Virus record (IMG/VR): IMGVR_UViG_3300035703_000005
Location: 124,001-188,000 of that record
Reading direction: 5' to 3' (one strand)
DNA length: 64,000 nt
Part shown: positions 16,975-33,297 of the stretch, piece after piece
How the letters are laid out: each line of letters opens with the position of its first letter
Position numbering within the stretch: position 1 is the first letter of the stretch
Position numbers and translations under genes: made by a program
The notes under the pieces: generated by a model
The model's database searches: none
What the model saw: the letters and a program-made list of their open reading frames with translations, nothing else
What the model was told of the DNA's origin: nothing

Positions 16975-18105
16975 TCAGAACGGAGCGGGTTGGTCAAGGT
17001 CGTAAGTTACGTGCTCACCACCTTCAGAAGGCATTTTGAAATCAGCATCCACCTTGTCATAGAGTTCCAGGAAAGATTGCTTGGTCTCATCGTCAAAGCG
17101 ATTCACACACACTTGAATCGCTTTAGCCTTGTCATTGAAGATGCTGTAGGCACGGATGATATGAACCAGACGGCGGGTGCTGATGATTTCTTCAATACCA
17201 CCATCGTAAAAAGTCTTGCGGATAATGTCGGCCCAATCTGCGAGACGCTTACAGAAATTGGAATCATTTACACCAAGAGTTTGAGCAACTTTCTCAAGAA
17301 TCTTGACTTCATTTGCAACAGAAGGATATTCCTGTTCAAAGGTCACAGGGAAACGCTCAAGAAATGCTTCATTGAGAACGTTAGTACCGATAAAACGACC
17401 ATCATCCGAACCCTTACCTTTGGTATTTGCAGTAGCAACAACATTGAAACCAGAAGTAGGTTTAACGAACTTACCAATTTTCTTGAGGAAAACGCCTTTA
17501 CCTTCAAGAACAGATTGCAGACACAGAATTTTGTTAGAGGCAAGGTCAATTTCATCCAACAGGAGAATTGCGCCACGCTCAAGGGCTTCAATCACAGGGC
17601 CATTGTGCCAAGCGGTTTCACCGTTCACAAGACGGAAGCCACCAATCAGATCATCCTCATCAGTCTCAATGGTAATGTTAACACGGATTAGCTCCCGACC
17701 CAACTGAGCACAAGCTTGTTCCACTCCAAAAGTCTTCCCGTTACCGCTAAGACCAGTGATAAAGGTAGGGTAAAACAGACGACTGGAAATAATTTTCTTA
17801 ATGTCGTTAAAATTGCCAAACTTGACGAAGGTATCATCTTTTTCGGGAATAAGGTTTTGATGTACTTCAGGGAGAACTGCAACATTGTTAAAAGAACGCT
17901 CAATTTCTTCCACACGCTCTTGAGTCACTTCCAGATTCCAACGACCACGAGCAGTCTTAAAATTTTCAAGACGGCGAGTAACCGTAGGATAAGAAAGATT
18001 GTTCATCGCACAATAGGCTTTGACATCACCAGAAGTAATATCAGAACCATAAGTGGACTTAAGACCTTCCAGGATTTGATCGTCGTTCATTTGAAGGCGG
18101 GGCAT
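16975..18105 (-). CDS. cobS: CobS-like MoxR-family AAA+ ATPase
   Basis: GLSGNGKT, LLLDEID, ATANTKGKG, NEAFLERF, ISTRRL. Confidence 0.9.
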   Translation of the reverse strand: MPRLQMNDDQILEGLKSTYGSDITSGDVKAYCAMNNLSYPTVTRRLENFKTARGRWNLEVTQERVEEIERSFNNVAVLPEVHQNLIPEKDDTFVKFGNFNDIKKIISSRLFYPTFITGLSGNGKTFGVEQACAQLGRELIRVNITIETDEDDLIGGFRLVNGETAWHNGPVIEALERGAILLLDEIDLASNKILCLQSVLEGKGVFLKKIGKFVKPTSGFNVVATANTKGKGSDDGRFIGTNVLNEAFLERFPVTFEQEYPSVANEVKILEKVAQTLGVNDSNFCKRLADWADIIRKTFYDGGIEEIISTRRLVHIIRAYSIFNDKAKAIQVCVNRFDDETKQSFLELYDKVDADFKMPSEGGEHVTYDLDQPAPF

Positions 18106-18130
18106 TGTGTAGTGTGTTTTTCAACTGAGG

Positions 18131-18190
18131 CTATAATACGACAAAAAAAGGGGGGTTGGAAGCCCCCTTGTGCAGGTTTTCAAAGTGGCC
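18131..18190 (-). repeat. Intergenic element copy 1: imperfect palindrome, G/C hairpin, U tract and TATTAT box
   Basis: GGCCACTTTGAAAACCTGCAC-AAGGGGG...CCCCCCTTTTTTT-GTCGTATTATAG. Confidence 0.7.
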
Positions 18191-19045
18191 TCAGTCTCTT
18201 GCCGAGTGCATCATTTCTTCGCCGCGTTTTTTATCTTCACGGCGTTTTGCTACCTTTTGTGCAGGAGAAACTGCAGGTGCTTCTGGTTTTACTTTACCAG
18301 TGCGATCTTTTTTCTTTCCTCTTTCTTGAATTGCTCCACCAGCACCCATTCTACCAGCACCCATAACCTTGTGCATGTGTCTCATGACTTTTGAGTCAAG
18401 GTCATCGCCGCCCATGGTGCCACCTTTAACTACTGGTTTTCCAGTTTTATAATCCTTACCAGTTTTTTTCTCATAACGATTAAGTTCCATAATATCCTCA
18501 AACCAGGCTTCACTCATGTTGAGAATAATTTTATCGGCAGCTTCTTCAGTTGAAGCAAAACCTTCATCAAGAAGATAGGAAAAAACTAACTCATAAGCAT
18601 TAAAACTTTCAGCACTTACACCAGTTTTCTTCTGTCTTTCTGCCTTTTTACCTTTTGGTTTTCCACCAGAATCACTTGGACCACCATCAAAGTCTGGATC
18701 ATAACCAGTATGTCCGTATTCCGCCTCACCTCTTGCGTGATCTCTATCACTTTGAGTCATTCCACTTCTTCTACCTGAATAGGGAGAAGGTTTAGTTGAC
18801 TTCTTACCTCTATTTCCCGCATCAGGATTAAGAGTTCTGTAGTGGTGTTTTTCTGCAGATTTTACTTTTGCAGTCTTTTCACCTCTTTTTGAAAATCCAC
18901 TTGCAGGAGTAGATCTTCTCTTATTAGCAAGGGAACCATAAGCAGCAGTTGCTTTTGGAGTTTGTCCATAAGAACCTTCTGCTTCATCAAGTTGACCAAC
19001 CTGACTATAAGCTTCTTGCAATCCCTGTAAATGTTCTGCGTCCAT
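18191..19045 (-). CDS. Basic modular late protein (MDAxxLxxLQEAY family), paralogue 1
   Basis: Start set at MDAEHLQ after CTAAATA (19065-19071); shares the YLLDEGFA...NMSEAW module with 21406..21981. Confidence 0.8.
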   Translation of the reverse strand: MDAEHLQGLQEAYSQVGQLDEAEGSYGQTPKATAAYGSLANKRRSTPASGFSKRGEKTAKVKSAEKHHYRTLNPDAGNRGKKSTKPSPYSGRRSGMTQSDRDHARGEAEYGHTGYDPDFDGGPSDSGGKPKGKKAERQKKTGVSAESFNAYELVFSYLLDEGFASTEEAADKIILNMSEAWFEDIMELNRYEKKTGKDYKTGKPVVKGGTMGGDDLDSKVMRHMHKVMGAGRMGAGGAIQERGKKKDRTGKVKPEAPAVSPAQKVAKRREDKKRGEEMMHSARD

Positions 19046-19072
19046 TTTTACAATACTTTTTAAGTATTTAGT

Positions 19073-19096
19073 AAAAAAGGAGGGTTTCCCCTCCTC
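19073..19096 (-). terminator. Intrinsic terminator fused to a late promoter
   Basis: GAGGAGGGGAAACCCTCCTTTTT immediately followed by ACTAAATA. Confidence 0.75.
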
Positions 19097-21305
19097 ATGC
19101 AACTAGTTCAATGAACTCTCCAAGAACTTTTTTATTCATTTTTTTACACTTCAGTGACTTAGCGAAGGCAGTTCGGATTTGAGTTTTACTTGCATCATCT
19201 GAAACATCAAACTCCGTCTCGTTAGAAAGAGCCGAACCGGAAAGTCCAAAGTATGCATGATATCCGGATTTCTTAATTGCAAAAGATTTATTCTTTTTCC
19301 AGTCATTCATGATTTCATTATACTCCTTATTTTCCTGATAGTAACCAAAAGAATAATCGGAACTCTCATAGTAACGACGAATAAAACTTCCCGCATCACG
19401 ACCTTCTAGAACCCGAATACCAATAAAGTTTATATCAGTGAAACGATCACGAAGATTACGAAGAAGAACATCAGTAAAACTAGTATAATCTCCTTCCAAC
19501 TTATAAGTAGAACCGATCTTACGATCACGAAGAATTGTATTGGATCCGATAGAGTTCAGACCAATGTACACTTCCTCAGTATCATAATTAAAACGACCTT
19601 TGAATTCCTTATGAAATTTAAGAGGTGCAGCTTCACCATCAGTCAGAACAACACATTGAACTTTCTGAAGTTTATTTTCCCGTTGAAATTGAGGAAGAAT
19701 TTGATGAAGTGCAACCAAAGTTTCATTCAAGGGAGTTCCAGAAAGAGAGAGACGGTGTGGATGACTGTACTCAGGTGCATTATTATAACTGTACTTAAAC
19801 TCTTTAGCTAACCTAAAGATATTGATCATCTGTTCTTCAAGAACACGATTATTTACTTTACTAGTAAACAAGTTCATGAGTGAAAAAGTTTCATCTACAT
19901 AGATCAATCCGTGTTTCTTTTCATAATGCGGTTTCATAGATTTTGGACGATGATTTTCATCATAGTCATAACGACGCCACTCATTAGTAAAAGCATAGAC
20001 CTCAAACGGAATCGCAACTTTCTTACAAAACCACATCAAGTTATAAAGTTGTTTGAGAGTGTCCATCATCACTTGAGACATGGAACCAGACCAATCCAGA
20101 ACAAATACAAGACCATGATTCTTACCATTAGAAAGAGTGGTGACTTTCTTGAAAAGATCTTCATTGTATTTGTAAGTATGAAGTTTAGAACAGTCCAGAA
20201 CACCAGTACGAGCGGTTGTAGCACGGGCATAAGAATCTGCTGCCTTACGACACTCAAACTCTTTCACAAGATAATTAACTTCTTTCTGCGCAGAACGCTT
20301 GAATTCCCGATACTCTTTATCTACCTCACCAAAAAGATATTCTTTGGGATTGTGTTCATAAGAATATTTTGCAATAGTTTTTTCCCACCAATCGTTGATC
20401 TCTTTATGAACTTCAACATTTAAACCAATAACACTATCGAGATTAAGTTTAGGAAGTTCCAGATAAGTGTTTTCTGACCCATTCATGTTCACAAGATCAC
20501 GAAGAGCTTCTTCTAGATTGTCAGCGGTTTTAACTTCAGGTTCGGCGGATTCTCCACCAAGATTTGAACTAGTATCAGTAGGGGAATCCATTTTATCATC
20601 CGACTGACCATCAGAGGACGCCTGGCCACCCTCTCCAGAAGTTTCCAAGTCATCCTCCTGAGAAGGATTTTGTTCCTCTTGAGGCGCACTTTCCGACCCA
20701 TTGCCAGGAGTTGATTGAAGATTATCAAAAGAATCAATTTTAATTTGTTCTTTATCCTTCCTCTTACAATACTCGTAAAGTTTTACGGCAGCTGCAATCG
20801 CATCATCAAAAGTTTCTGCATCAGCAACCATATTCAGGATTTCAGTTTCTTCACCCCGTTCAATAGGAATCTGAGTGAACCCACCAATCTTAAACCACAG
20901 ATTTACGCGATCTGCAAGATTGTAGGTAGAGATATCATCGTCTTTGATTTGAAAAAAATCGTCCTCATGCAGTTCTTTATAACCTGCGAAGAAAGATTTG
21001 TTCAGACCCGCATAACGACGCTTCATCATCTTCTCAATACGAGCGTCTTCCGTCACATTCACGAATTGTTGAGGAATCGTAAACTTCTTACTCCAATCTT
21101 CATTAGGAGTATAGAGAGCATGACCCACTTCATGACCAACAAGCATGTCATAGACTGCGTTAGAAGCTTTCTCCCACATCGGAAGAGTCAGAACGCGAGT
21201 GTCTACATTGAAACATGCAGTAGGAACTTGTTTGTGTTCTACCACAAGGTCTTCTGTTGCGAGAAGACGAGCGAGTTGACCTTTGACTTCGTGATTAACA
21301 GGCAT
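19095..21305 (-). CDS. CobT-like protein: N-terminal HExxH domain, acidic linker, C-terminal VWA
   Basis: HEVGHAL and EDARIE; MIDAS DWSGSM, GTPL, LTDGE; partner of the cobS-like ATPase; start set at MPVNHEVKG. Confidence 0.85.
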   Translation of the reverse strand: MPVNHEVKGQLARLLATEDLVVEHKQVPTACFNVDTRVLTLPMWEKASNAVYDMLVGHEVGHALYTPNEDWSKKFTIPQQFVNVTEDARIEKMMKRRYAGLNKSFFAGYKELHEDDFFQIKDDDISTYNLADRVNLWFKIGGFTQIPIERGEETEILNMVADAETFDDAIAAAVKLYEYCKRKDKEQIKIDSFDNLQSTPGNGSESAPQEEQNPSQEDDLETSGEGGQASSDGQSDDKMDSPTDTSSNLGGESAEPEVKTADNLEEALRDLVNMNGSENTYLELPKLNLDSVIGLNVEVHKEINDWWEKTIAKYSYEHNPKEYLFGEVDKEYREFKRSAQKEVNYLVKEFECRKAADSYARATTARTGVLDCSKLHTYKYNEDLFKKVTTLSNGKNHGLVFVLDWSGSMSQVMMDTLKQLYNLMWFCKKVAIPFEVYAFTNEWRRYDYDENHRPKSMKPHYEKKHGLIYVDETFSLMNLFTSKVNNRVLEEQMINIFRLAKEFKYSYNNAPEYSHPHRLSLSGTPLNETLVALHQILPQFQRENKLQKVQCVVLTDGEAAPLKFHKEFKGRFNYDTEEVYIGLNSIGSNTILRDRKIGSTYKLEGDYTSFTDVLLRNLRDRFTDINFIGIRVLEGRDAGSFIRRYYESSDYSFGYYQENKEYNEIMNDWKKNKSFAIKKSGYHAYFGLSGSALSNETEFDVSDDASKTQIRTAFAKSLKCKKMNKKVLGEFIELVA

Positions 21306-21325
21306 GAACTTTGTTTCGTATGCGA

Positions 21326-21384
21326 CTATAATACACAAAAAAGGGGGGTCAAACCCCCCTAGTGTGCCAGTTTGGAAAGTGGTC
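21326..21384 (-). repeat. Intergenic element copy 2
   Basis: GACCACTTTCCAAACTGGCAC-ACTAGGGGGG...CCCCCCTTTTTT-GTGTATTATAG. Confidence 0.7.
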
Positions 21385-21405
21385 TTCAACCATTAAGATT
21401 TTAAT

Positions 21406-21981
21406 TTACCAATTATCCTGAAGTTCATTACTTCTAGGTCTTCCCGCATCTCTTTTACGTCCTCCTGTTCGTCTATTATCGTCCTCTTTTCTTTGAGATC
21501 TATTAGGATTATGAGCATCAGCAACCTTGCCCATTTTTGCAACTCGTTTTGGATTGCTATGCCTTGCAGATTGGTTTATCATTTTGCCTACAGGAAGTTT
21601 TTTATATCCTTCATCAACAATCTCTTCTCTCCACTCCTCACTCATATTTACCATAATTACTTGTGCTGCTTCTGGTGTTTCGGCATATCCTTCATCAAGA
21701 AGATGTGAGAGAATGATATCGTAGTAATCATAACTATCAGATACAGCAATACGACTATCCTTTACTTCTTTACCTGCTCTTCTTCTTGCTCTATTACCAG
21801 AACCAACATCTTCTGGTTTTTGTCTTTTACGAGCACTAAGTTTTCTAAGAGTTTCAACATCTCTTAGTTTTCTATCAAGTAAATCAGATGCCTTTTGTTT
21901 GCGAGCACCAGTAAGTTCTTCATCAACCTGATGAACTTGATTATATGCTTCTTGAAGATTGCAAAGTTCTTGTGCGTCCAT
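21406..21981 (-). CDS. Basic modular late protein (MDAxxLxxLQEAY family), paralogue 2
   Basis: MDAQELCNLQEAYNQV; YDIILSHLLDEGYAETPEAAQVIMVNMSEEW; TATAAATA at 22002-22009. Confidence 0.8.
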   Translation of the reverse strand: MDAQELCNLQEAYNQVHQVDEELTGARKQKASDLLDRKLRDVETLRKLSARKRQKPEDVGSGNRARRRAGKEVKDSRIAVSDSYDYYDIILSHLLDEGYAETPEAAQVIMVNMSEEWREEIVDEGYKKLPVGKMINQSARHSNPKRVAKMGKVADAHNPNRSQRKEDDNRRTGGRKRDAGRPRSNELQDNW

Positions 21982-21996
21982 CTTATGAGATACTTT

Positions 21997-22140
21997 TTAG
22001 ATATTTATAAAAGAAGAAGCGCCCTGTGAGAGGCGCTTCTTGAGTGCTTGGCGTCTTGCCTTCGCTTGTCGCAGTGCTTGTGGTTTAAGTTTTCGTTTTT
22101 GTTCCTTCTTGGAATGGTGTTGCCAGTTTGGTGTGGTCAT
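21997..22140 (-). CDS. Small basic hypothetical protein (47 aa), not in ORF track
   Basis: MTTPNWQHHSKKEQKRKLKPQALRQAKARRQALKKRL...; ATGA overlap with the gp46 stop. Confidence 0.7.
   Translation of the reverse strand: MTTPNWQHHSKKEQKRKLKPQALRQAKARRQALKKRLSQGASSFINI
22006..22041 (-). terminator. Terminator-like hairpin running into a late promoter
   Basis: AAGAAGCGCC-8 nt-GGCGCTTCTT then CTTTTATAAATA. Confidence 0.65.
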
Positions 22141-23855
22141 GACACGAGTTTACTGAATCCTTTTACTTTATCAAATTTCATCACCTTGTCAAATTTATCC
22201 ATGAGGTCGTCGGTCTTATGTGAGATTACGAACACATGAGCATCCTGAATGACATAACGAATAATATTTGTGAAAAAATCTGTTCCTGCACCATCCAAAG
22301 AACTATCAAAGATTTCGTCTAAGATGAGAAGATTTGTACTGGCCGAGTTCCTAAGTTTGGCAATATCCCGCCAAGTAAACAAGAGAGAAAGGTCAATACG
22401 CATCTTCTCACCTTCACTAAACGATTCATAACTAAAATCTTCGTGAACTGGTGACTTGATAACCTCCTTAAACTCTTCATCCAATGTGAAATTGATGTAG
22501 AAGTCCATCATCTGTAGATACTTGTTTATCTGCTGATTCATAAGAGGCAGATACTTTTTGATGATTTTGGACTTTACTCCACCATCTTTCATCAATGAAT
22601 GAGCGAACTCGTAATAATTAACTTGTTCCTTTTCCTTAGATCTTTCTTTTTCTAATGTTTCAAGATCCGTTATTAAGTTTTCAAGGGCTTTGCGTTCAGA
22701 ATTTCGGTTTTGAACTTGTTCGGTAATTTCTTGAATTTCGTTTCGTAGATTCCTGATTTGTCTGTTAAGCCCAGTAATTTTAACATTGTTGTGTGAAATG
22801 TCATTGTTGAGTCTGTTAATCTCCGTAGAATAAGATAAAAATTGTTGATCTTTTTCTAGTTCTACATTGATTGCATCCTCCAACTCTTGGTATCCGCCAT
22901 TGAGTTCTTTGGATTTCTCCTCAATATCTACAATCTTATCTAGGCGAAATTTTTCCTCAATACTTTGCGTACATGTAGGACAAACCGAATTCTCCTGAAA
23001 AAACTTATGTTCAGAAACTAGTGTTTGTATTTTTTGTTCAAGTTTAGCTTTGATTTGATTTAATTTTTTTAGAGTTGAATTTGTACTAGTAAGTTCTTCC
23101 AACTTTGGTTGAAGATCTCTTTCAATCATTACCAAAGTAGCTTCATTATCAGTAGTCAATTCATCAATTTCATTCTCAATAGTTTGAATATTTTCTTCTT
23201 TTCTTTTGATACGATCTTTTCCACTTTTGTCAAGATCTTTGATGAAGTTCTCTTGCATCTCAATCTTATCCTCAATCATTTCTTTTTTGATTGAATATTC
23301 ACGAATGAGTTCATTAGTGCGTCTCATTCTTTCTTTCAGGATATTATTCATAGTAGAGAAAATCTTGATATCAAGAAGATCTTCTACAATTTCTCTACGA
23401 TGAGCAGAAGTCAACTGCATAAATGGAACAAAAGTTGCAGATCCAAGAATAACTGTCTGCGTGAAAGACTTATAGTTTAATTTTAGAATACTTTCCTCAA
23501 GTTTCTTTTGTTGATCTTGAGCTGCGGAATCTTGATTTTGAACAGTTCCGTCTATCGAGATCTCAAAAATATTCGGTTTAATTCCTCTTACTACCTTATA
23601 GTCTTTATTTCCAATCGTGAATTCAATTTCCACAAGACAATCCTTCTCATTCACAGAGTTAATGAGTTGAGGTTTATTAATCTTACGGAATGGTTTGTTA
23701 TACAGTACAAAAGTAAGAGCATCCAAAATGGTACTCTTACCAGAACCATTAGTTCCGACAATTAGATTTGTTTGAGCGTCTTGAAAATTTACTTCAGTAA
23801 ATTGATTTCCAGTGGAAAGAAAATTACGCCAACGAATTGTTTTAAAAATAATCAC
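22137..23855 (-). CDS. gp46: Rad50/SbcC-like recombination ATPase (gp46)
   Basis: GTNGSGKST, CPTC hook, FSEGEKMR, LDEIFDSSLD, ISH. Confidence 0.97.
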   Translation of the reverse strand: MIIFKTIRWRNFLSTGNQFTEVNFQDAQTNLIVGTNGSGKSTILDALTFVLYNKPFRKINKPQLINSVNEKDCLVEIEFTIGNKDYKVVRGIKPNIFEISIDGTVQNQDSAAQDQQKKLEESILKLNYKSFTQTVILGSATFVPFMQLTSAHRREIVEDLLDIKIFSTMNNILKERMRRTNELIREYSIKKEMIEDKIEMQENFIKDLDKSGKDRIKRKEENIQTIENEIDELTTDNEATLVMIERDLQPKLEELTSTNSTLKKLNQIKAKLEQKIQTLVSEHKFFQENSVCPTCTQSIEEKFRLDKIVDIEEKSKELNGGYQELEDAINVELEKDQQFLSYSTEINRLNNDISHNNVKITGLNRQIRNLRNEIQEITEQVQNRNSERKALENLITDLETLEKERSKEKEQVNYYEFAHSLMKDGGVKSKIIKKYLPLMNQQINKYLQMMDFYINFTLDEEFKEVIKSPVHEDFSYESFSEGEKMRIDLSLLFTWRDIAKLRNSASTNLLILDEIFDSSLDGAGTDFFTNIIRYVIQDAHVFVISHKTDDLMDKFDKVMKFDKVKGFSKLVS

Positions 23856-29971: not shown

Positions 29972-31366
29972 TCACATTAAGTTGGAGACCTTTACTCTTC
30001 TGTAGTAACGGTTTGCATTGAGGCGTAGTCTGCCAAGACCCTGATCGGTTCCTTCTGCAAATGGGTTTGCAACGATTCCGTAACGAGTCTTGAATCCGAT
30101 TTTTGGCTGGAAGGTGTCCTGACCAACGGCACGAACCATCTGGAGAGGAACATATGGGCAGTAGAAGATACCAGCATCGTATGCGCTAGAACCCTTATAA
30201 CCTACAACGTAGTACTGATCAGCAGCAACGTTTGCAGCATATGGGTCAATGTATACACGATACTTACCTTGGAGAACACCAGCGAAGGTGTTACCAGTGT
30301 CATCAACGTTTAGGTTAGCGTTGAGTGCAGGGGTGTAATCAAGAACACCAGCCATGGTTAGAGCGGAAGCAACGTCTGCGGAGCAGATGATGGTATTGCC
30401 CTTTCCTCTACGAGTTCTTTGTGCGATTGCGTTAGCATCACGCTCGATCTGGAAAAGTAGACCCTTGAACTTCTCAACGGACCAACGACCATTGGAGTCA
30501 ACGTCGAGGTCAAATACACCAGCGGTAGCAGTGTTAACAGCAGCACCTTGCTCAGCAACCTTATAGATGGTTCTGATGACTTCTCTGTTGATTTCAGCGA
30601 GGATCTCAGTGGAGAGAATGTTAGCAAGTTCTGCTTCTGCGTTTAGACCGTGGATTGCCTTGAGGTCTTGAGCGAGCTCTAGGGAGTACTCAGCCTTGAG
30701 GGCACGTGACTTAGCAGTTACGGTAACTTTCTCGATGCTGAATGCCATCTGGTTGAAGGCATTAGATGCAGAATCTCCAAGAGCTTCTGAATCACCAGTA
30801 GCCATACCCTGACCAACATTATATGGTGATGGGTTGGTGGTTGCAGATCCAACTGGGTTGAGAACGTTAGGATTGGTTCCATCCTGGTTGGTTGTACCGA
30901 AACCAACGAGACCATCGGAGAATCCGTTGGCAAGGTTACGGCTGTTGTTCTGACCAGAGAAGGTGGTATCTACTTCATCGAAGAAGGTCTCAGTACCAGA
31001 CTGAGAATCGTAACGGGAACGCATTGCGAAGATGAGTCCAGTAGGACCACTCATTGGCTGAACACCACAGATGTCATAAGCAATGAGGTTAGGCATTGCA
31101 CGACGAATGAGGCTGATTAGAACTGGGTCGAAACCAGCAACAGGTCCACCAGCAGTAGCGGAACCAGAGAAACCACCAGTACCAGCAGAGTTAACTGGGG
31201 AAGCTTCGCCAAGGAACTCAGCAGACTCGCGTAGTTCTCTCTCTTGGTTCTCTAGAAGTTGTGCAGTTACTGCACGTCTGTGGGAATCTTTGATGTCGCC
31301 TAGACCGTCGAAGTCTAGAACTGGAGCCCACTTCTCCATTAACATTTGTGAGTTAATTCCGTCCAT
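29972..31366 (-). CDS. gp23: Major capsid protein (gp23)
   Basis: GVQPMSGPTGLIFAMR, KSRALKAEY, YCPYVPL, GFKTRYG. Confidence 0.99.
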   Translation of the reverse strand: MDGINSQMLMEKWAPVLDFDGLGDIKDSHRRAVTAQLLENQERELRESAEFLGEASPVNSAGTGGFSGSATAGGPVAGFDPVLISLIRRAMPNLIAYDICGVQPMSGPTGLIFAMRSRYDSQSGTETFFDEVDTTFSGQNNSRNLANGFSDGLVGFGTTNQDGTNPNVLNPVGSATTNPSPYNVGQGMATGDSEALGDSASNAFNQMAFSIEKVTVTAKSRALKAEYSLELAQDLKAIHGLNAEAELANILSTEILAEINREVIRTIYKVAEQGAAVNTATAGVFDLDVDSNGRWSVEKFKGLLFQIERDANAIAQRTRRGKGNTIICSADVASALTMAGVLDYTPALNANLNVDDTGNTFAGVLQGKYRVYIDPYAANVAADQYYVVGYKGSSAYDAGIFYCPYVPLQMVRAVGQDTFQPKIGFKTRYGIVANPFAEGTDQGLGRLRLNANRYYRRVKVSNLM

Positions 31367-31426: not shown

Positions 31427-32599
31427 TCACTTTTTAGCAACGTTGGAAAGCGCGCGTAGATAAGCGTCCATAGAAGGTGAATGATTCACTTCTTGGAAAT
31501 TTGCTTCTTCTGTTAGATTTTCCGTTTCGTTTGCTGGAATACCAGCGTTTCTTGGGAAGTATGACTCCCTAAGAGTTACCAGCTTCTGGTAATAGTCATT
31601 CTCACTCTCAAACTCAACACTTTCAGAGAGGCTTGCAAGCTTGTCCTTTTGGGAAAGAGCTAGACCCTCAGAAACTTGGTTTAGAATTCTGTCAGCGGCA
31701 GATTCTGCAAGTTTCGTATTTAGAGCAATATTCTTTTGAATTTGCTCGTTGAGTTTTGTCTCCATTTCATCAAGTTTTTCTACCATGCTCTCTAGTACAT
31801 CATATTTTTCTTCAGGCATTGATACATAATGTTCTTCAAAAAGACCCTTCATACCAGCGATGAAGGACTCAGTGATCTCAGTCTTGAGACCACTTTCAAC
31901 TGCGAGAGCATTTTCTTCTAACCATTCGGATGCAACATACTCAAGATATGAGTCAACTCTTTCGGTTAGTTCTAGTTTGATCTCTTCGATCTCTTCTGCA
32001 AGAGCAGCAGCATAGTGCTCTTCCAGAGAAGATTGAATTTCTTTTGTTTTAGCGTGAAGAGCAGCTTCAAATACTAATTTTGCTTTTTCTTTGAATTCTT
32101 CGGATAACTCTTCTTCGCCGGAGAGGAGAGCATTTACGTCCTCATCAATGATAGAATTTACATCCTCTTCGACAACTTCTTCTGCATCTTCCTCAGATTC
32201 GGTTTCTTCAACCTCACCTTCTTCGTCACCTTCTTCTGCAATTATTTCTTCTTCAACTTCTTCTTCAACTTCTTCTTTCATACCACCACCTTGACCTGGG
32301 GTAGCAACGGAAGTTGCAGAAGTTGCAGCAGCATCAGGTGCAGAAGCTTTAGCATTTACAACGTCCTTAACTTGCTTAAGAGTTGCGCCAGGTGTTTTTA
32401 ACATGTTGGAATTATCATCTGGCTTGCTGTTTTCTGGAGTTGGGCCTCCAAGATCTTCCCAAGCACCAGTTTGACCAGGAGTTGCAACTGGAGTTGCGCT
32501 CTTGTGTGGTGCTTCCGGTGCAGATGCGTTAGCATTTACAGCGGTTTTGGATTGTGAAGTGCCGGTTTCCATTTCTTGTAAATTTTTACCACGGGACAT
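31427..32599 (-). CDS. gp22: Prohead core / scaffold (gp22)
   Basis: Acidic coiled coil; LSEEFKEKAKLVFEAA, VDSYLEY. Confidence 0.93.
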   Translation of the reverse strand: MSRGKNLQEMETGTSQSKTAVNANASAPEAPHKSATPVATPGQTGAWEDLGGPTPENSKPDDNSNMLKTPGATLKQVKDVVNAKASAPDAAATSATSVATPGQGGGMKEEVEEEVEEEIIAEEGDEEGEVEETESEEDAEEVVEEDVNSIIDEDVNALLSGEEELSEEFKEKAKLVFEAALHAKTKEIQSSLEEHYAAALAEEIEEIKLELTERVDSYLEYVASEWLEENALAVESGLKTEITESFIAGMKGLFEEHYVSMPEEKYDVLESMVEKLDEMETKLNEQIQKNIALNTKLAESAADRILNQVSEGLALSQKDKLASLSESVEFESENDYYQKLVTLRESYFPRNAGIPANETENLTEEANFQEVNHSPSMDAYLRALSNVAKK

Positions 32600-32646: not shown

Positions 32647-33297
32647 TTAAAGATTTGATAAAAACTCTTGGAACAGATTTAATTTCTGTTCATCAAGTCT
32701 TCTTTGATCAACAAGAGTGTTAATTCTCTTTTGAGTATTGGAAGCAAGTTGTTCACGAAGAATTCCTCCTTCCCAAACCCACTCCTTTCCTTCCATAATT
32801 CCAGATACAAATGCATCAGGAGCTGAAGGATCAGCAACAATATCTGCAGCAGTTGCAAGCATAAAATCTTCACCAACTACTTTATAACCTTCATTAGTTG
32901 TAGTTAATGAACCTACACCACGAGAAGAAACTCCTAACATTACACCTTCATCAAGAAGAGAAGATGCAATTTTGCCCATTGGAGTATTAAGAATCTGAGC
33001 TTTACCTACAAAGTTATTTCCCTCTTGAACAAGAGAAGTAATTTTGTGAGAAACACGATCGAGATTAACTGTTGGTCCATCTGGATGACCAAGCTCTCCG
33101 AGAGCACGACCCTTCGCAACAAAACTTTCATTATAACGATTTACTTCACGAGTAAGGGTTGTAATAGGATACATTCTTCCATTACGATTTTTAATTTCGC
33201 CTTGGAGAAATACTCCTTCAATATAAAGTTTTTTATCAGCACCTTTTCCTTCGGTGATAATCTTTACATTTGTTACTTCTTCGGTGATTAGTTTCAT
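32647..33297 (-). CDS. gp21: Prohead protease (gp21)
   Basis: NRNGRMYP, GELGHP, VSSRGVGS, DIVADPSAPDA. Confidence 0.97.
   Translation of the reverse strand: MKLITEEVTNVKIITEGKGADKKLYIEGVFLQGEIKNRNGRMYPITTLTREVNRYNESFVAKGRALGELGHPDGPTVNLDRVSHKITSLVQEGNNFVGKAQILNTPMGKIASSLLDEGVMLGVSSRGVGSLTTTNEGYKVVGEDFMLATAADIVADPSAPDAFVSGIMEGKEWVWEGGILREQLASNTQKRINTLVDQRRLDEQKLNLFQEFLSNL

What the first reader, a model, noticed from the sequence alone, without database searches (positions are those of the whole stretch)
18191..22009. Two paralogous late cassettes with a shared scaffold and swapped basic cargo
Seen: both have a terminator, late promoter, TAAAAAGTAT and ATGGACGCA. Both proteins run MDAxxLxxLQEAYxQV.Q(L/V)DE, then a variable K/R-rich segment, then the conserved acidic module Y...S(Y/H)LLDEG(F/Y)A.T.EAA..I..NMSE.W...I.(D)E, then a second variable basic segment. 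Inference: a carrier architecture in which the constant acidic parts mediate prohead loading and the variable cargo peptides are released by gp21. The cassettes are inserted moron-like into an early operon.
Basis: partly seen in the sequence, partly recalled or inferred. Interest (0 to 1): 0.65.

Follow-up and report, generated by a model that had tools for sequence, protein, structure and literature searches.

The report
Portable late-gene cassettes, mosaic basic proteins
Two neighbouring genes of a freshwater T4-like cyanophage belong to a very large, unnamed family of patchwork, highly charged late proteins, each carried in a self-contained insulated expression cassette; they may be packaged in the phage head like T4's internal proteins, but that is not shown.

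Summary
Genes A (18191-19045, -) and B (21406-21981, -) share a terminator, a T4-type late promoter, the leader TAAAAAGTAT, a 21-aa acidic N-terminus and a 45-aa acidic module. Between these lie basic segments that differ between A and B. A third paralogue lies outside the window.

The family is large: the module matches 3,743 clusters (50% identity). It has no Pfam family and only PHROGs of unknown function. In 59 of 61 distinct related loci a TATAAATA-like box lies 18-23 nt before the ATG. Many also have a conserved box after the stop codon, then a G/C hairpin terminator joined to a sigma-70-like promoter that would restart the downstream early gene.

Family genes sit in at least 15 genomic contexts. 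The gp46|cobT-like site, where B sits, recurs in 20 loci with different members.

The "variable cargo" is not free-form. A's first basic segment and B's tail are themselves recurring modules, so the family is a combinatorial module library.

The module folds confidently as a three-helix domain; the rest is predicted disordered. [LIV]xE motifs, the T4 gp21 cleavage form, mark the boundaries of the conserved elements, and the phage encodes gp21. Prohead loading and processing therefore remain plausible, about 0.4, but untested: I found no virion proteome, RNA data or supported complex.

The parts
18191..19045 (-). Gene A, 284 aa (P0001). N motif aa 1-21 (nt 19045-18983). Basic 'AEGSYG...KTGVSAE' module aa 22-143 (18982-18617). 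Acidic three-helix module M aa 144-187 (18616-18485). Basic tail aa 188-284 (18484-18194). Stop codon 18193-18191.
   Evidence: The aa 22-143 module recurs in DSL-LC02, S-CREM1 ORF219 and S-SZBM1 gp082.
19046..19096 (-). 5' control region of A: terminator hairpin 19096-19077 plus T-run, late-promoter variant ACTAAATA 19072-19065, and leader CTTAAAAAGTATTGTAAAA with no Shine-Dalgarno sequence.
   Evidence: The same layout is seen in 59 of 61 distinct related loci.
18125..18190 (-). 3' element of A: box CCACTTTGAAAACCTGCACA (18188-18169), G/C hairpin 18169-18148 plus T-run, then a -10-like TATTAT just before the CobS-like gene.
   Evidence: This type of element was found only after A, B and the third paralogue in the 249-kb genome.
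16975..18105 (-). CobS-like AAA_5/CbbQ_C ATPase, the gene downstream of cassette A.
   Evidence: Pfam. It lies in the same position relative to a family gene in S-SRM01.
19095..21305 (-). cobT-like / 'peptidase' gene (HExxH motif, no Pfam hit), lying between the two cassettes.
   Evidence: It is the downstream neighbour of family genes in many loci.
21406..21981 (-). Gene B, 191 aa (P0002). N motif aa 1-21 (21981-21919). Hypervariable basic segment aa 22-79 (21918-21745). Module M aa 80-124 (21744-21610). Conserved basic tail aa 125-191 ending NELQDNW (21609-21409).
   Evidence: Structure models.
21982..22041 (-). 5' control region of B: terminator hairpin 22041-22014, exact late promoter TATAAATA 22009-22002, and leader TCTAAAAAGTATCTCATAAG.
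21320..21405 (-). 3' element of B: box CCACTTTCCAAACTGGCACA (21382-21363), G6-loop-C6 hairpin 21360-21342 with TTGACC in and around the loop, T-run, and -10 TATAGT ending at 21325. It resembles a PeSL (promoter-early stem-loop) and would restart the cobT-like gene.
   Evidence: PeSLs are described in PMC4122927 and PMC2839356.
21997..22140 (-). Small basic ORF of 47 aa, overlapping the gp46 stop by ATGA. Its last codons encode B's upstream hairpin and late promoter.
   Evidence: A homologous ORF is seen in L046. No Pfam hit.
22137..23855 (-). gp46-like SMC/Rad50 ATPase, the gene upstream of cassette B.
   Evidence: Pfam. It is the upstream neighbour of family genes in 20 of the 80 loci.
32647..33297 (-). 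gp21 prohead protease (Peptidase_S77), the enzyme proposed to process A and B.
   Evidence: It is 44% identical to T4 gp21.
29972..31366 (-). gp23 major capsid protein. FLGE|AS aligns with the T4 maturation site FLTE|AE.

Best explanation
SHOWN.
A and B, with a third paralogue elsewhere in the genome, belong to a very large, unannotated family of late-promoter-driven proteins of T4-like cyanomyoviruses. The relatives seen are mostly from freshwater or estuarine samples.

Each gene is a self-contained, insulated cassette with these parts in order:
1. an upstream rho-independent terminator;
2. a TATAAATA box;
3. a conserved leader without a Shine-Dalgarno sequence;
4. the ORF;
5. a conserved box straight after the stop codon;
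6. a G/C hairpin terminator joined to a sigma-70-like promoter.

This design lets a late gene sit inside an early or middle operon: early transcription is stopped and then restarted around it.

The proteins are mosaics. They have an acidic 21-aa N-terminal helix. They carry one to three copies of an acidic 45-aa three-helix domain (M). The rest is basic, predicted-disordered segments drawn from a repertoire of recurring modules.

Breakpoints between relatives fall at the conserved elements. This fits shuffling by recombination there, as proposed for PeSLs and the T4 internal-protein loci.

INFERRED (about 0.4).
The proteins work like T4 internal proteins.
- They are made late and enter the prohead core through the N motif and/or the M domain.
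- The acidic parts also mask the basic segments before packaging.
- gp21 cuts after [LIV]xE at the end of the N motif and at the end of M.
- The basic fragments stay with the packaged DNA. They act as counter-ions and possibly as injected effectors in an arms race, which would explain the diversity.
For: Cassette:
- The composite 5' pattern occurs twice in the window and in none of 100 shuffles.
- Of 61 distinct loci, 44 have exact TATAAATA, 11 NATAAATA and 4 NNTAAATA, all 18-23 nt before the ATG. 45 of 61 have AAAAAGTA in the leader. 39 of 56 have a downstream hairpin plus T-run, and 21 of those are followed by a -10-like box.
- In the phage's own genome TATAAATA occurs 20 times against about 60 expected, 18 on the coding strand, mostly 26-40 nt before an ATG.
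- The hairpin-plus-promoter element occurs only after A, B and the third paralogue.

Mobility:
- Family genes lie in at least 15 neighbour contexts; the gp46 site recurs in 20 loci. Some loci hold tandem pairs.
- Metagenome contigs join 21334 to 22053 (cassette B absent or replaced), 21385 to 21943 (B interior replaced) and 18586 to 19052.

Family size: 3,211 word-search hits and 3,743 clusters at 50% identity for the module profile.

Structure: M alone gives pLDDT 89.8 and pTM 0.67 with three helices. The full-length B model is otherwise of low confidence.

Likeness to internal proteins:
- gp21 is present.
- The gp23 site FLGE|A keeps the LxE form.
- 87% of N motifs are followed by [LIV]xE within 20 aa, against 44% in shuffles. 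97% of modules end in [LIV]xE or end the protein.
- In A and B these motifs are absent from the basic segments, with one exception in A. In T4 ipII and ipIII the only such site is the CTS cut.
- pI is 9.1-9.6, against 9.3-9.5 for T4 IPs.
- T4 ipII and ipIII also share a stem-loop, a leader and an N-terminus.
- T4 IP propeptides are 10-19 aa and target the core (PMC9026906). gp21 trims the IPs (PMC9958956).
Against: - There is no direct evidence of late transcription, packaging or cleavage. No RNA runs hold the region, and I could reach no proteome of a phage that carries the module.
- S-SZBM1_194, a 707-aa relative with only the basic module, is not among the 30 virion proteins reported for that phage. 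Very basic fragments are, however, easily missed by trypsin-based MS.
- The N motif shows no demonstrable homology to the T4 CTS.
- The [LIV]xE after M is part of a conserved helix, so its conservation need not reflect cleavage.
- A strongly conserved folded domain is more than charge masking requires.
- A's promoter deviates from the consensus (ACTAAATA).
Confidence: 0.4

Rival explanations
1. These are non-packaged late cytoplasmic proteins. As blocky polyampholytes (alternating acidic and basic blocks with one small folded interaction domain), they would act in the infected cell. Possible roles are condensing or organising replicated DNA for packaging, or scaffolding assembly condensates. 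They would never enter the capsid.
For: - Strong block-wise charge pattern and predicted disorder.
- Tolerance of extreme sequence turnover with conserved charge.
- S-SZBM1_194 is absent from the virion list.
- The genes lie outside the head-gene cluster.
Against: - This does not explain the invariant N-terminal position of the N motif.
- It does not explain the enrichment of [LIV]xE at module borders.
- Hypervariability of this degree is more typical of proteins that face host defences.
Confidence: 0.28
2. These are accessory prohead-core (scaffold) proteins like T4 gp67 and gp68. They would co-assemble with gp22, then be degraded completely by gp21 and expelled, so nothing would be delivered as cargo.
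For: - Late promoter, gp21 motifs and acidic helical elements.
- T4 gp67, gp68 and gp22 are likewise rich in [LIV]xE and are degraded to peptides (PMC9958956).
Against: - The basic segments of A and B lack cleavage motifs, unlike T4 gp22, which has about 20 sites.
- Scaffold proteins are normally conserved and single-copy. This family is hypervariable, multi-copy and scattered.
- The gp22-M complex prediction gave no verdict, so it counts neither way.
Confidence: 0.15
3. The M domain copies the dock region of RNA polymerase beta' (gamma in cyanobacteria). The proteins would then modulate host or phage transcription by competing for a factor that binds that region.
For: Three methods all rank the same beta' region first:
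- PDB sequence profile: 7l7b_D 370-391, E 0.71.
- Foldseek: top hits nearly all beta', TMq about 0.7, 26-28% identity.
- VIA-align: Z 6.6, 6.2 and 5.4 for plastid, mycobacterial and phiKZ polymerases.
Against: - None of the matches is significant: Foldseek E above 1, and Z below the tool's stated noise level for helical models.
- hhalign against E. coli beta' gives 6% probability.
- Small three-helix arrangements are common.
Confidence: 0.05
4. The cassettes are mainly selfish mobile DNA. The conserved leader, N motif, M module and 3' element would persist because they promote their own recombination and spread. The encoded proteins would give the phage little benefit.
For: - Many insertion contexts and conserved DNA flanks.
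- Some relatives lack the cassette at the same site.
Against: - ORFs stay open across thousands of clusters, with conserved protein-level features: a folded domain, the charge pattern and conserved tails.
- The cassettes encode no recombinase or nuclease.
Confidence: 0.07

Closest known systems
T4 internal proteins IPI, IPII and IPIII with their capsid targeting sequence (CTS)
   Same: - Late genes encoding basic proteins (pI about 9.3-9.5).
- A shared short N-terminal propeptide ending in [LI]xE, which is the only such motif in the protein.
- A repeated stem-loop and leader in front of each gene.
- Bodies that differ between paralogues and between related phages.
- A phage that encodes gp21.
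(PMC9026906, PMC9958956, PMC4122927)
   Different: - No sequence homology to MKTYQEFIAE.
- The N motif is 21 aa.
- There is an extra, strongly conserved folded acidic domain, sometimes in 2-3 copies or at the C-terminus.
- The bodies are mostly disordered and built from recurring modules.
- The genes are scattered over at least 15 loci rather than 2.
- Diversity is far larger (3,743 clusters).
- Packaging and cleavage are not demonstrated.
PeSLs (promoter-early stem-loops), the mobile regulatory cassettes of T4-type phages (Arbiol 2010; Comeau 2014)
   Same: - A G_n-loop-C_n terminator hairpin joined to a sigma-70-like promoter.
- Sits between genes at sites of insertion, deletion or replacement between relatives.
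- Proposed substrate for modular shuffling.
(PMC2839356, PMC4122927)
   Different: - Here the element is one end of a larger unit, whose other end is a terminator plus a LATE promoter and leader.
- It is tied to one protein family.
- My pattern found only three copies in this genome.
- An extra conserved box (ACCACTTTCCAAACTGGCACA) precedes the hairpin.
Morons of lambdoid phages
   Same: An autonomous transcription unit with its own promoter and terminator, inserted between genes of an operon.
   Different: - Driven by a lytic late promoter, not expressed from a prophage.
- Carries an additional promoter to restart the interrupted operon.
T4 prohead core proteins gp67, gp68 and gp22
   Same: Acidic helical segments, gp21 motifs and late expression.
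   Different: - No homology.
- A and B are net basic, hypervariable and multi-copy.
Protease-processed ejection or inner-body proteins of phiKZ-like phages, and (from general knowledge) the adenovirus basic core-protein precursors pVII and pre-Mu
   Same: Precursors cut after a short motif by the head-maturation protease, leaving fragments inside the capsid with the DNA (PMC9026906).
   Different: Unrelated sequences and viruses. The analogy is to the mechanism only.

Membership tests
T4-type internal proteins (CTS-bearing prohead cargo) | Gene preceded by a T4-type late promoter | tested here: met
   B has exact TATAAATA. A has ACTAAATA. 59 of 61 distinct homologous loci have a TATAAATA-like box 18-23 nt before the ATG. 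Only the motif was tested; transcription timing was not measured.
T4-type internal proteins (CTS-bearing prohead cargo) | N-terminal propeptide ending in a gp21 site ([LI]xE) | tested here: met
   A has LDE at residue 21 and B has VDE at 21. 180 of 207 N motifs are followed by [LIV]xE, against 91 in shuffles. This tests the motif only; cleavage was not tested.
T4-type internal proteins (CTS-bearing prohead cargo) | Sequence homology to the T4 CTS or to the IP bodies | tested here: not met
   T4 ipII and ipIII, fetched from the record, start MKTYQEFIAE. They show no alignable similarity to MDAxxLxxLQEAY. There are no Pfam hits and no named PHROG hits.
T4-type internal proteins (CTS-bearing prohead cargo) | Phage encodes a gp21-family prohead protease | tested here: met
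   Peptidase_S77 at window 32647-33297, E 3e-39, 44% identical to T4 gp21.
T4-type internal proteins (CTS-bearing prohead cargo) | Protein or its fragments present in purified virions and injected | not testable with these tools
   - The S-CRM01 proteome paper is not held, and the S-CRM01 record does not flag MS-detected proteins.
- S-SRM01 has no proteome.
- S-SZBM1_194, which carries only the basic module, is not in that phage's virion table.
PeSL mobile regulatory cassettes | G/C stem-loop terminator joined to a sigma-70-like early promoter | tested here: met
   21360-21325 and 18169-about 18133. 21 of 56 related loci have a hairpin plus a -10-like box.
PeSL mobile regulatory cassettes | Many dispersed copies within hyperplastic regions of one genome | tested here: inconclusive
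   My pattern found only three copies in the 249-kb genome, all after family genes. Looser variants were not searched exhaustively.
PeSL mobile regulatory cassettes | Located at indel or replacement breakpoints between related genomes | tested here: met
   Contig joints fall at cassette borders. Different members lie between the same flanks.
Moron | Autonomous promoter and terminator, inserted within an operon | tested here: met
Moron | Expressed from the repressed prophage | tested here: not met
   The cassettes carry a lytic late-promoter motif and lie in a T4-like genome with a T4-type replication and head gene set. No search for integrase or lysogeny genes was run.
RNAP beta' dock-like three-helix fold (M domain) | Significant structural or sequence match to the dock region | tested here: inconclusive
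   Z 6.6, 6.2 and 5.4; Foldseek E above 1; HMM E 0.71; hhalign 6%.

The most novel reading that the evidence does not exclude
Freshwater T4-like cyanophages carry a combinatorial library of thousands of modular precursors that are loaded into the prohead and processed by gp21. Each would be encoded in a portable, self-insulating late cassette. The 45-aa M domain would be a dedicated loading or masking domain. The basic modules would be delivered into the host with the DNA as counter-ions and anti-defence effectors. This would be a far more elaborate version of the T4 internal-protein arms-race locus.
Probability: 0.3. Interest if true: 0.8.

Novelty: new variant of a known kind. Interest (0 to 1): 0.6.

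Why it matters
- If these are packaged proteins, they would be the first internal-protein system described for cyanomyoviruses. T4 gp67, gp68 and IP homologues are not recognised in this group; that statement rests on my general knowledge.
- A family of 3,700+ clusters would then give a natural library for studying what phages inject alongside DNA, and how cargo is targeted.
- Whatever the function, the cassette shows how a late gene can be dropped into an early operon without polar effects: terminator, late promoter, ORF, terminator, restart promoter. It extends the PeSL idea of regulatory elements as recombination joints to late genes.
- The family is currently 'hypothetical protein' everywhere, so even naming it would improve cyanophage annotation.

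Tried and rejected
- Pfam gave nothing. PHROGs gave only families of unknown function. The protein atlas gave only unnamed viral clusters. A PDB sequence search gave nothing significant.
- Complex prediction of gp22 (residues 150-390) with the M domain gave no verdict (score 0.20, mark 0.34). It is no evidence either way.
- Proteome cross-checks failed:
  - The S-CRM01 paper is not held.
  - The S-CRM01 record does not mark MS-detected proteins.
  - The S-CREM1 supplement does not say which ORFs were detected.
  - S-SRM01 has no proteome.
  - S-CREM2, which has a full virion table, showed no family member by tblastn.
- Expression: no RNA runs hold the region.
- The RNAP beta' dock resemblance was followed up with hhalign and failed to reach support (6%).
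- I considered a UBA-like fold for M from the sequence pattern. A UBA chain appears only at rank 37 (Z 3.5) in the fold search, so I dropped it.
- I considered the 3' box as a pairing partner of the 5' leader. By eye only about 5 bp are complementary, so I rejected it.
- Depth differences in read laying were not used, because the runs are contigs. Only the joints were used, and cautiously, since they were called at 80% likeness.

Full report
WHAT THE WINDOW IS

The window is bases 124001-188000 of a 248,835-bp, CheckV-complete viral contig. Megablast hits are only to Synechococcus myoviruses. The contig encodes T4-type gp46, gp45, gp21, gp22 and gp23. Near-identical DNA occurs in freshwater metagenomes from at least seven studies. 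It is therefore a freshwater T4-like cyanomyovirus.

All genes in the region are on the minus strand. Gene A runs 18191-19045 (284 aa); the ATG at 19045 is the real start, not the upstream TTG. Gene B runs 21406-21981 (191 aa).

- The composite TAAATAYYTAAAAAGTAT-N5-9-ATGGACGCA occurs at exactly these two places and in none of 100 shuffles. TAAAAAGTAT alone would not be significant.
- Terminator-like hairpins lie just upstream of each promoter and just downstream of each gene.
- B has a perfect TATAAATA. A has ACTAAATA.
- The proteins align only at the first 21 residues (14 of 21 identical) and over the module (38% identity, E 2e-14).
N is -5. The first variable segment is +10 in B and +13 in A. 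The module is -12 in B and -10 in A. The tail is +11 in B and +13 in A. Overall pI is 9.1-9.6.
- A third paralogue of 359 aa, with the same N motif, module and 3' element, lies at G000:C1:111047-112126.

THE FAMILY

There is no Pfam match, and the PHROG matches are to families of unknown function.

- A word-based search with B found 3,211 proteins, all labelled hypothetical.
- A profile of the 45-49-aa module against 1.84 billion representatives found 3,743 clusters at 50% identity with E <= 1e-3, and 2,520 with E <= 1e-10. Lengths run from 46 to 535 aa.
- Of the 144 new proteins among the 150 listed, 36 carry two modules and 111 carry the N motif.
- Cultured carriers of the module are S-CRM01 (g93, g291, g292), S-SRM01, DSL-LC02 and DSL-LC03, B3 and B23, S-CAM7 and S-SCSM2R.

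WHAT VARIES AND WHAT DOES NOT

In 27 B-type homologues:
- residues 1-21 are conserved;
- residues 22-80 cannot be aligned, with lengths of about 50-160 aa;
- the module is nearly invariant;
- the tail (KLPVGKM...NELQDNW) is conserved.

A's first basic segment (AEGSYGQTPKA...KKTGVSAE) is itself a conserved module. It is 53% identical in DSL-LC02. It is present twice in S-CREM1 ORF219 (783 aa) and once in S-SZBM1 gp082 (707 aa). In other members it sits at the C-terminus.

Parts of B's variable segment (GNRARRRAGKEVKDS) recur at the ends of other members. So 'cargo' is better described as a repertoire of recurring basic modules recombined between constant elements.

THE CASSETTE

I fetched 80 of 564 IMG/VR loci.

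- 5' side. Of 61 distinct loci, 44 have TATAAATA, 11 have NATAAATA and 4 have NNTAAATA, always 18-23 nt before the ATG. 45 have AAAAAGTA in the leader. 27 have a hairpin plus T-run just upstream.
- 3' side. The stop codon is often followed at once by the box ACCACTT(T/C)CCAAAC(T/C)GGCACA. Then comes a G/C hairpin with a T-run (39 of 56 loci) and a TATAAT-like -10 box (21 loci). The next gene follows.
- In this genome the hairpin-plus-promoter element occurs only three times, after A, B and the third paralogue.
- TATAAATA itself is rare (20 copies against about 60 expected). It is strand-biased (18 on the coding strand) and usually lies 26-40 nt before an ATG, including those of the gene I take for the portal and other structural genes. 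It therefore behaves as a real late promoter.
- The 3' element matches the description of PeSLs of T4-type phages: a G_n-loop-C_n stem-loop plus a sigma-70-like promoter, implicated in modular shuffling (PMC2839356, PMC4122927).

The whole unit thus stops incoming transcription, fires late on its own, stops again and restarts the downstream gene. That is a sensible way to place a late gene between gp46, the cobT-like gene, the CobS-like ATPase and gp45.

MOBILITY

- Neighbours of family genes in the 80 loci fall into at least 15 different contexts, all homologous to genes of this phage. The gp46|cobT-like site (B's position) recurs in 20 loci with members that have different tails.
- The cobT-like|CobS site (A's position) is also occupied in S-SRM01 by a member with a different interior. 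Several loci hold tandem pairs.
- Freshwater metagenome contigs laid on the region show joints at cassette borders:
  - 21334 to 22053: cassette B missing or replaced;
  - 21385 to 21943: B interior replaced between its 3' end and its N motif;
  - 18586 to 19052: A's N-proximal part replaced up to the module;
  - 18587 to 21685: A's module joined to B's module.
- These joints were called at 80% likeness in metagenomes, so they are indicative only.

STRUCTURE

- Full-length B models poorly (pLDDT 59). The N helix and the module are helical and the rest is of low confidence.
- The module alone, with 50 diverse sequences, gives pLDDT 89.8 and pTM 0.67, with helices at residues 2-16, 22-31 and 34-44.
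- No fold match is significant. The best matches by three methods are nonetheless all the same region of RNA polymerase beta'. hhalign against E. coli beta' gives only 6%. I record this as a lead, not a result.

DOES IT WORK LIKE T4 INTERNAL PROTEINS?

For:
- The phage has gp21. Its gp23 keeps an LxE|A site where T4 gp23 is cut.
- 87% of N motifs are followed within 20 residues by [LIV]xE, against 44% in shuffled windows. 97% of modules either end in [LIV]xE or end the protein.
- In A and B these motifs are otherwise absent from the basic segments, with one exception in A.
- T4 ipII and ipIII, read from the T4 record, have their only [LIV]xE at the CTS cut. They share a stem-loop, a leader and an N-terminus, and have similar pI.
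- T4 IP propeptides of 10-19 residues target the core and are removed by gp21 (PMC9026906, PMC9958956). IP sequences differ between close relatives (PMC4122927).

Against:
- There is no homology to the CTS.
- The I-x-E after the module is part of a conserved helix.
- I could obtain no transcript or proteome data.
- S-SZBM1_194 is missing from that phage's list of 30 virion proteins.
- The single complex prediction (gp22 with the module) returned no verdict.

VERDICT

The cassette and mosaic-family description is secure, at about 0.9. The carrier/cargo/gp21 mechanism is a reasonable analogy that the sequence evidence favours over its rivals but does not establish, at about 0.4.

The finding is best classed as a new variant of known kinds: T4 internal-protein loci and PeSL-type mobile regulatory cassettes. 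The protein family is uncharacterised and unusually large.

Noticed in passing
G000:C1:111047-112126 (-), outside the window (L002:1339-2418): A third paralogue of 359 aa. It starts MRAEEIKGLMEAYSKVH, has a Pro/Ala-rich basic middle, carries the module HLLDEGYAETEENALVMMANMSKEWRESII, and has the same hairpin-plus-promoter element after its stop. S-SRM01 gp269 is its counterpart.
   Followed up: partly
window 18188-18169 and 21382-21363; G000:C1:243417 (-): A conserved 20-nt box, (A)CCACTTTnnAAACnnGCACA, lies directly after the stop codons of A and B and of many homologues. A third copy in the genome precedes another gene's -10 box, with no family gene nearby. What it does is unknown; it could be an activator site, an UP-like element or a recombination joint.
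   Followed up: partly
window 21610-21744 and 18485-18616 (module M): The best sequence and fold matches of the 45-aa module are all to the dock region of RNA polymerase beta' (for example VMDKLVKEGYAHNIKSAKSIVE in C. difficile beta'). None is significant.
   Followed up: partly
window 21919-21981 compared with 21610-21650: The N motif (NLQEAYxxVxxLDE) resembles the third helix of the module (NMSEEWRESIxE). In relatives both can be followed by (G/E)YKKLPVGKM. The N motif may therefore be a truncated module.
   Followed up: no
window 21997-22140 (-): A 47-aa basic ORF overlaps the gp46 stop by ATGA. Its last codons encode cassette B's upstream terminator and late promoter. A homologue occurs in locus L046.
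   Followed up: no
G000:C1:103665 (-), outside the window: A 173-aa ORF (METLFKLLSDAQ...) is preceded by TATAAATACTTGAAAAAGTATCTGTATAATG. This is the same late promoter and leader type as the cassettes, yet the protein is unrelated.
   Followed up: no
whole genome G000: TATAAATA is three-fold under-represented (20 copies against about 60 expected), and 18 of the 20 are on the minus, coding strand.
   Followed up: yes
window 31427-32599 (-), gp22: The scaffold protein starts MSRGKNLQEME, which shares NLQE with the family N motif. It also contains a long poly-acidic stretch and about 25 [LIV]xE motifs.
   Followed up: no
L006:596-2947 (S-CREM1 ORF219) and L007:2470-4593 (S-SZBM1 gp082): Two large basic proteins (783 and 707 aa) carry A's 'AEGSYG...' module, twice in S-CREM1 ORF219 and once in S-SZBM1 gp082. 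They also carry a related WVESLVEEGYDLS(D/E)(F/Y)TW(D/E)(D/E)M motif and lack the M module. The S-SZBM1 gene lies next to the small-terminase gene.
   Followed up: partly
window 19095-21305 (-): The cobT-like 'peptidase' between the cassettes has an HExxH motif (VGHEVGHALY) but no Pfam match at E <= 0.001. Public records annotate its homologues inconsistently, as peptidase, midasin or RNA-binding protein.
   Followed up: no
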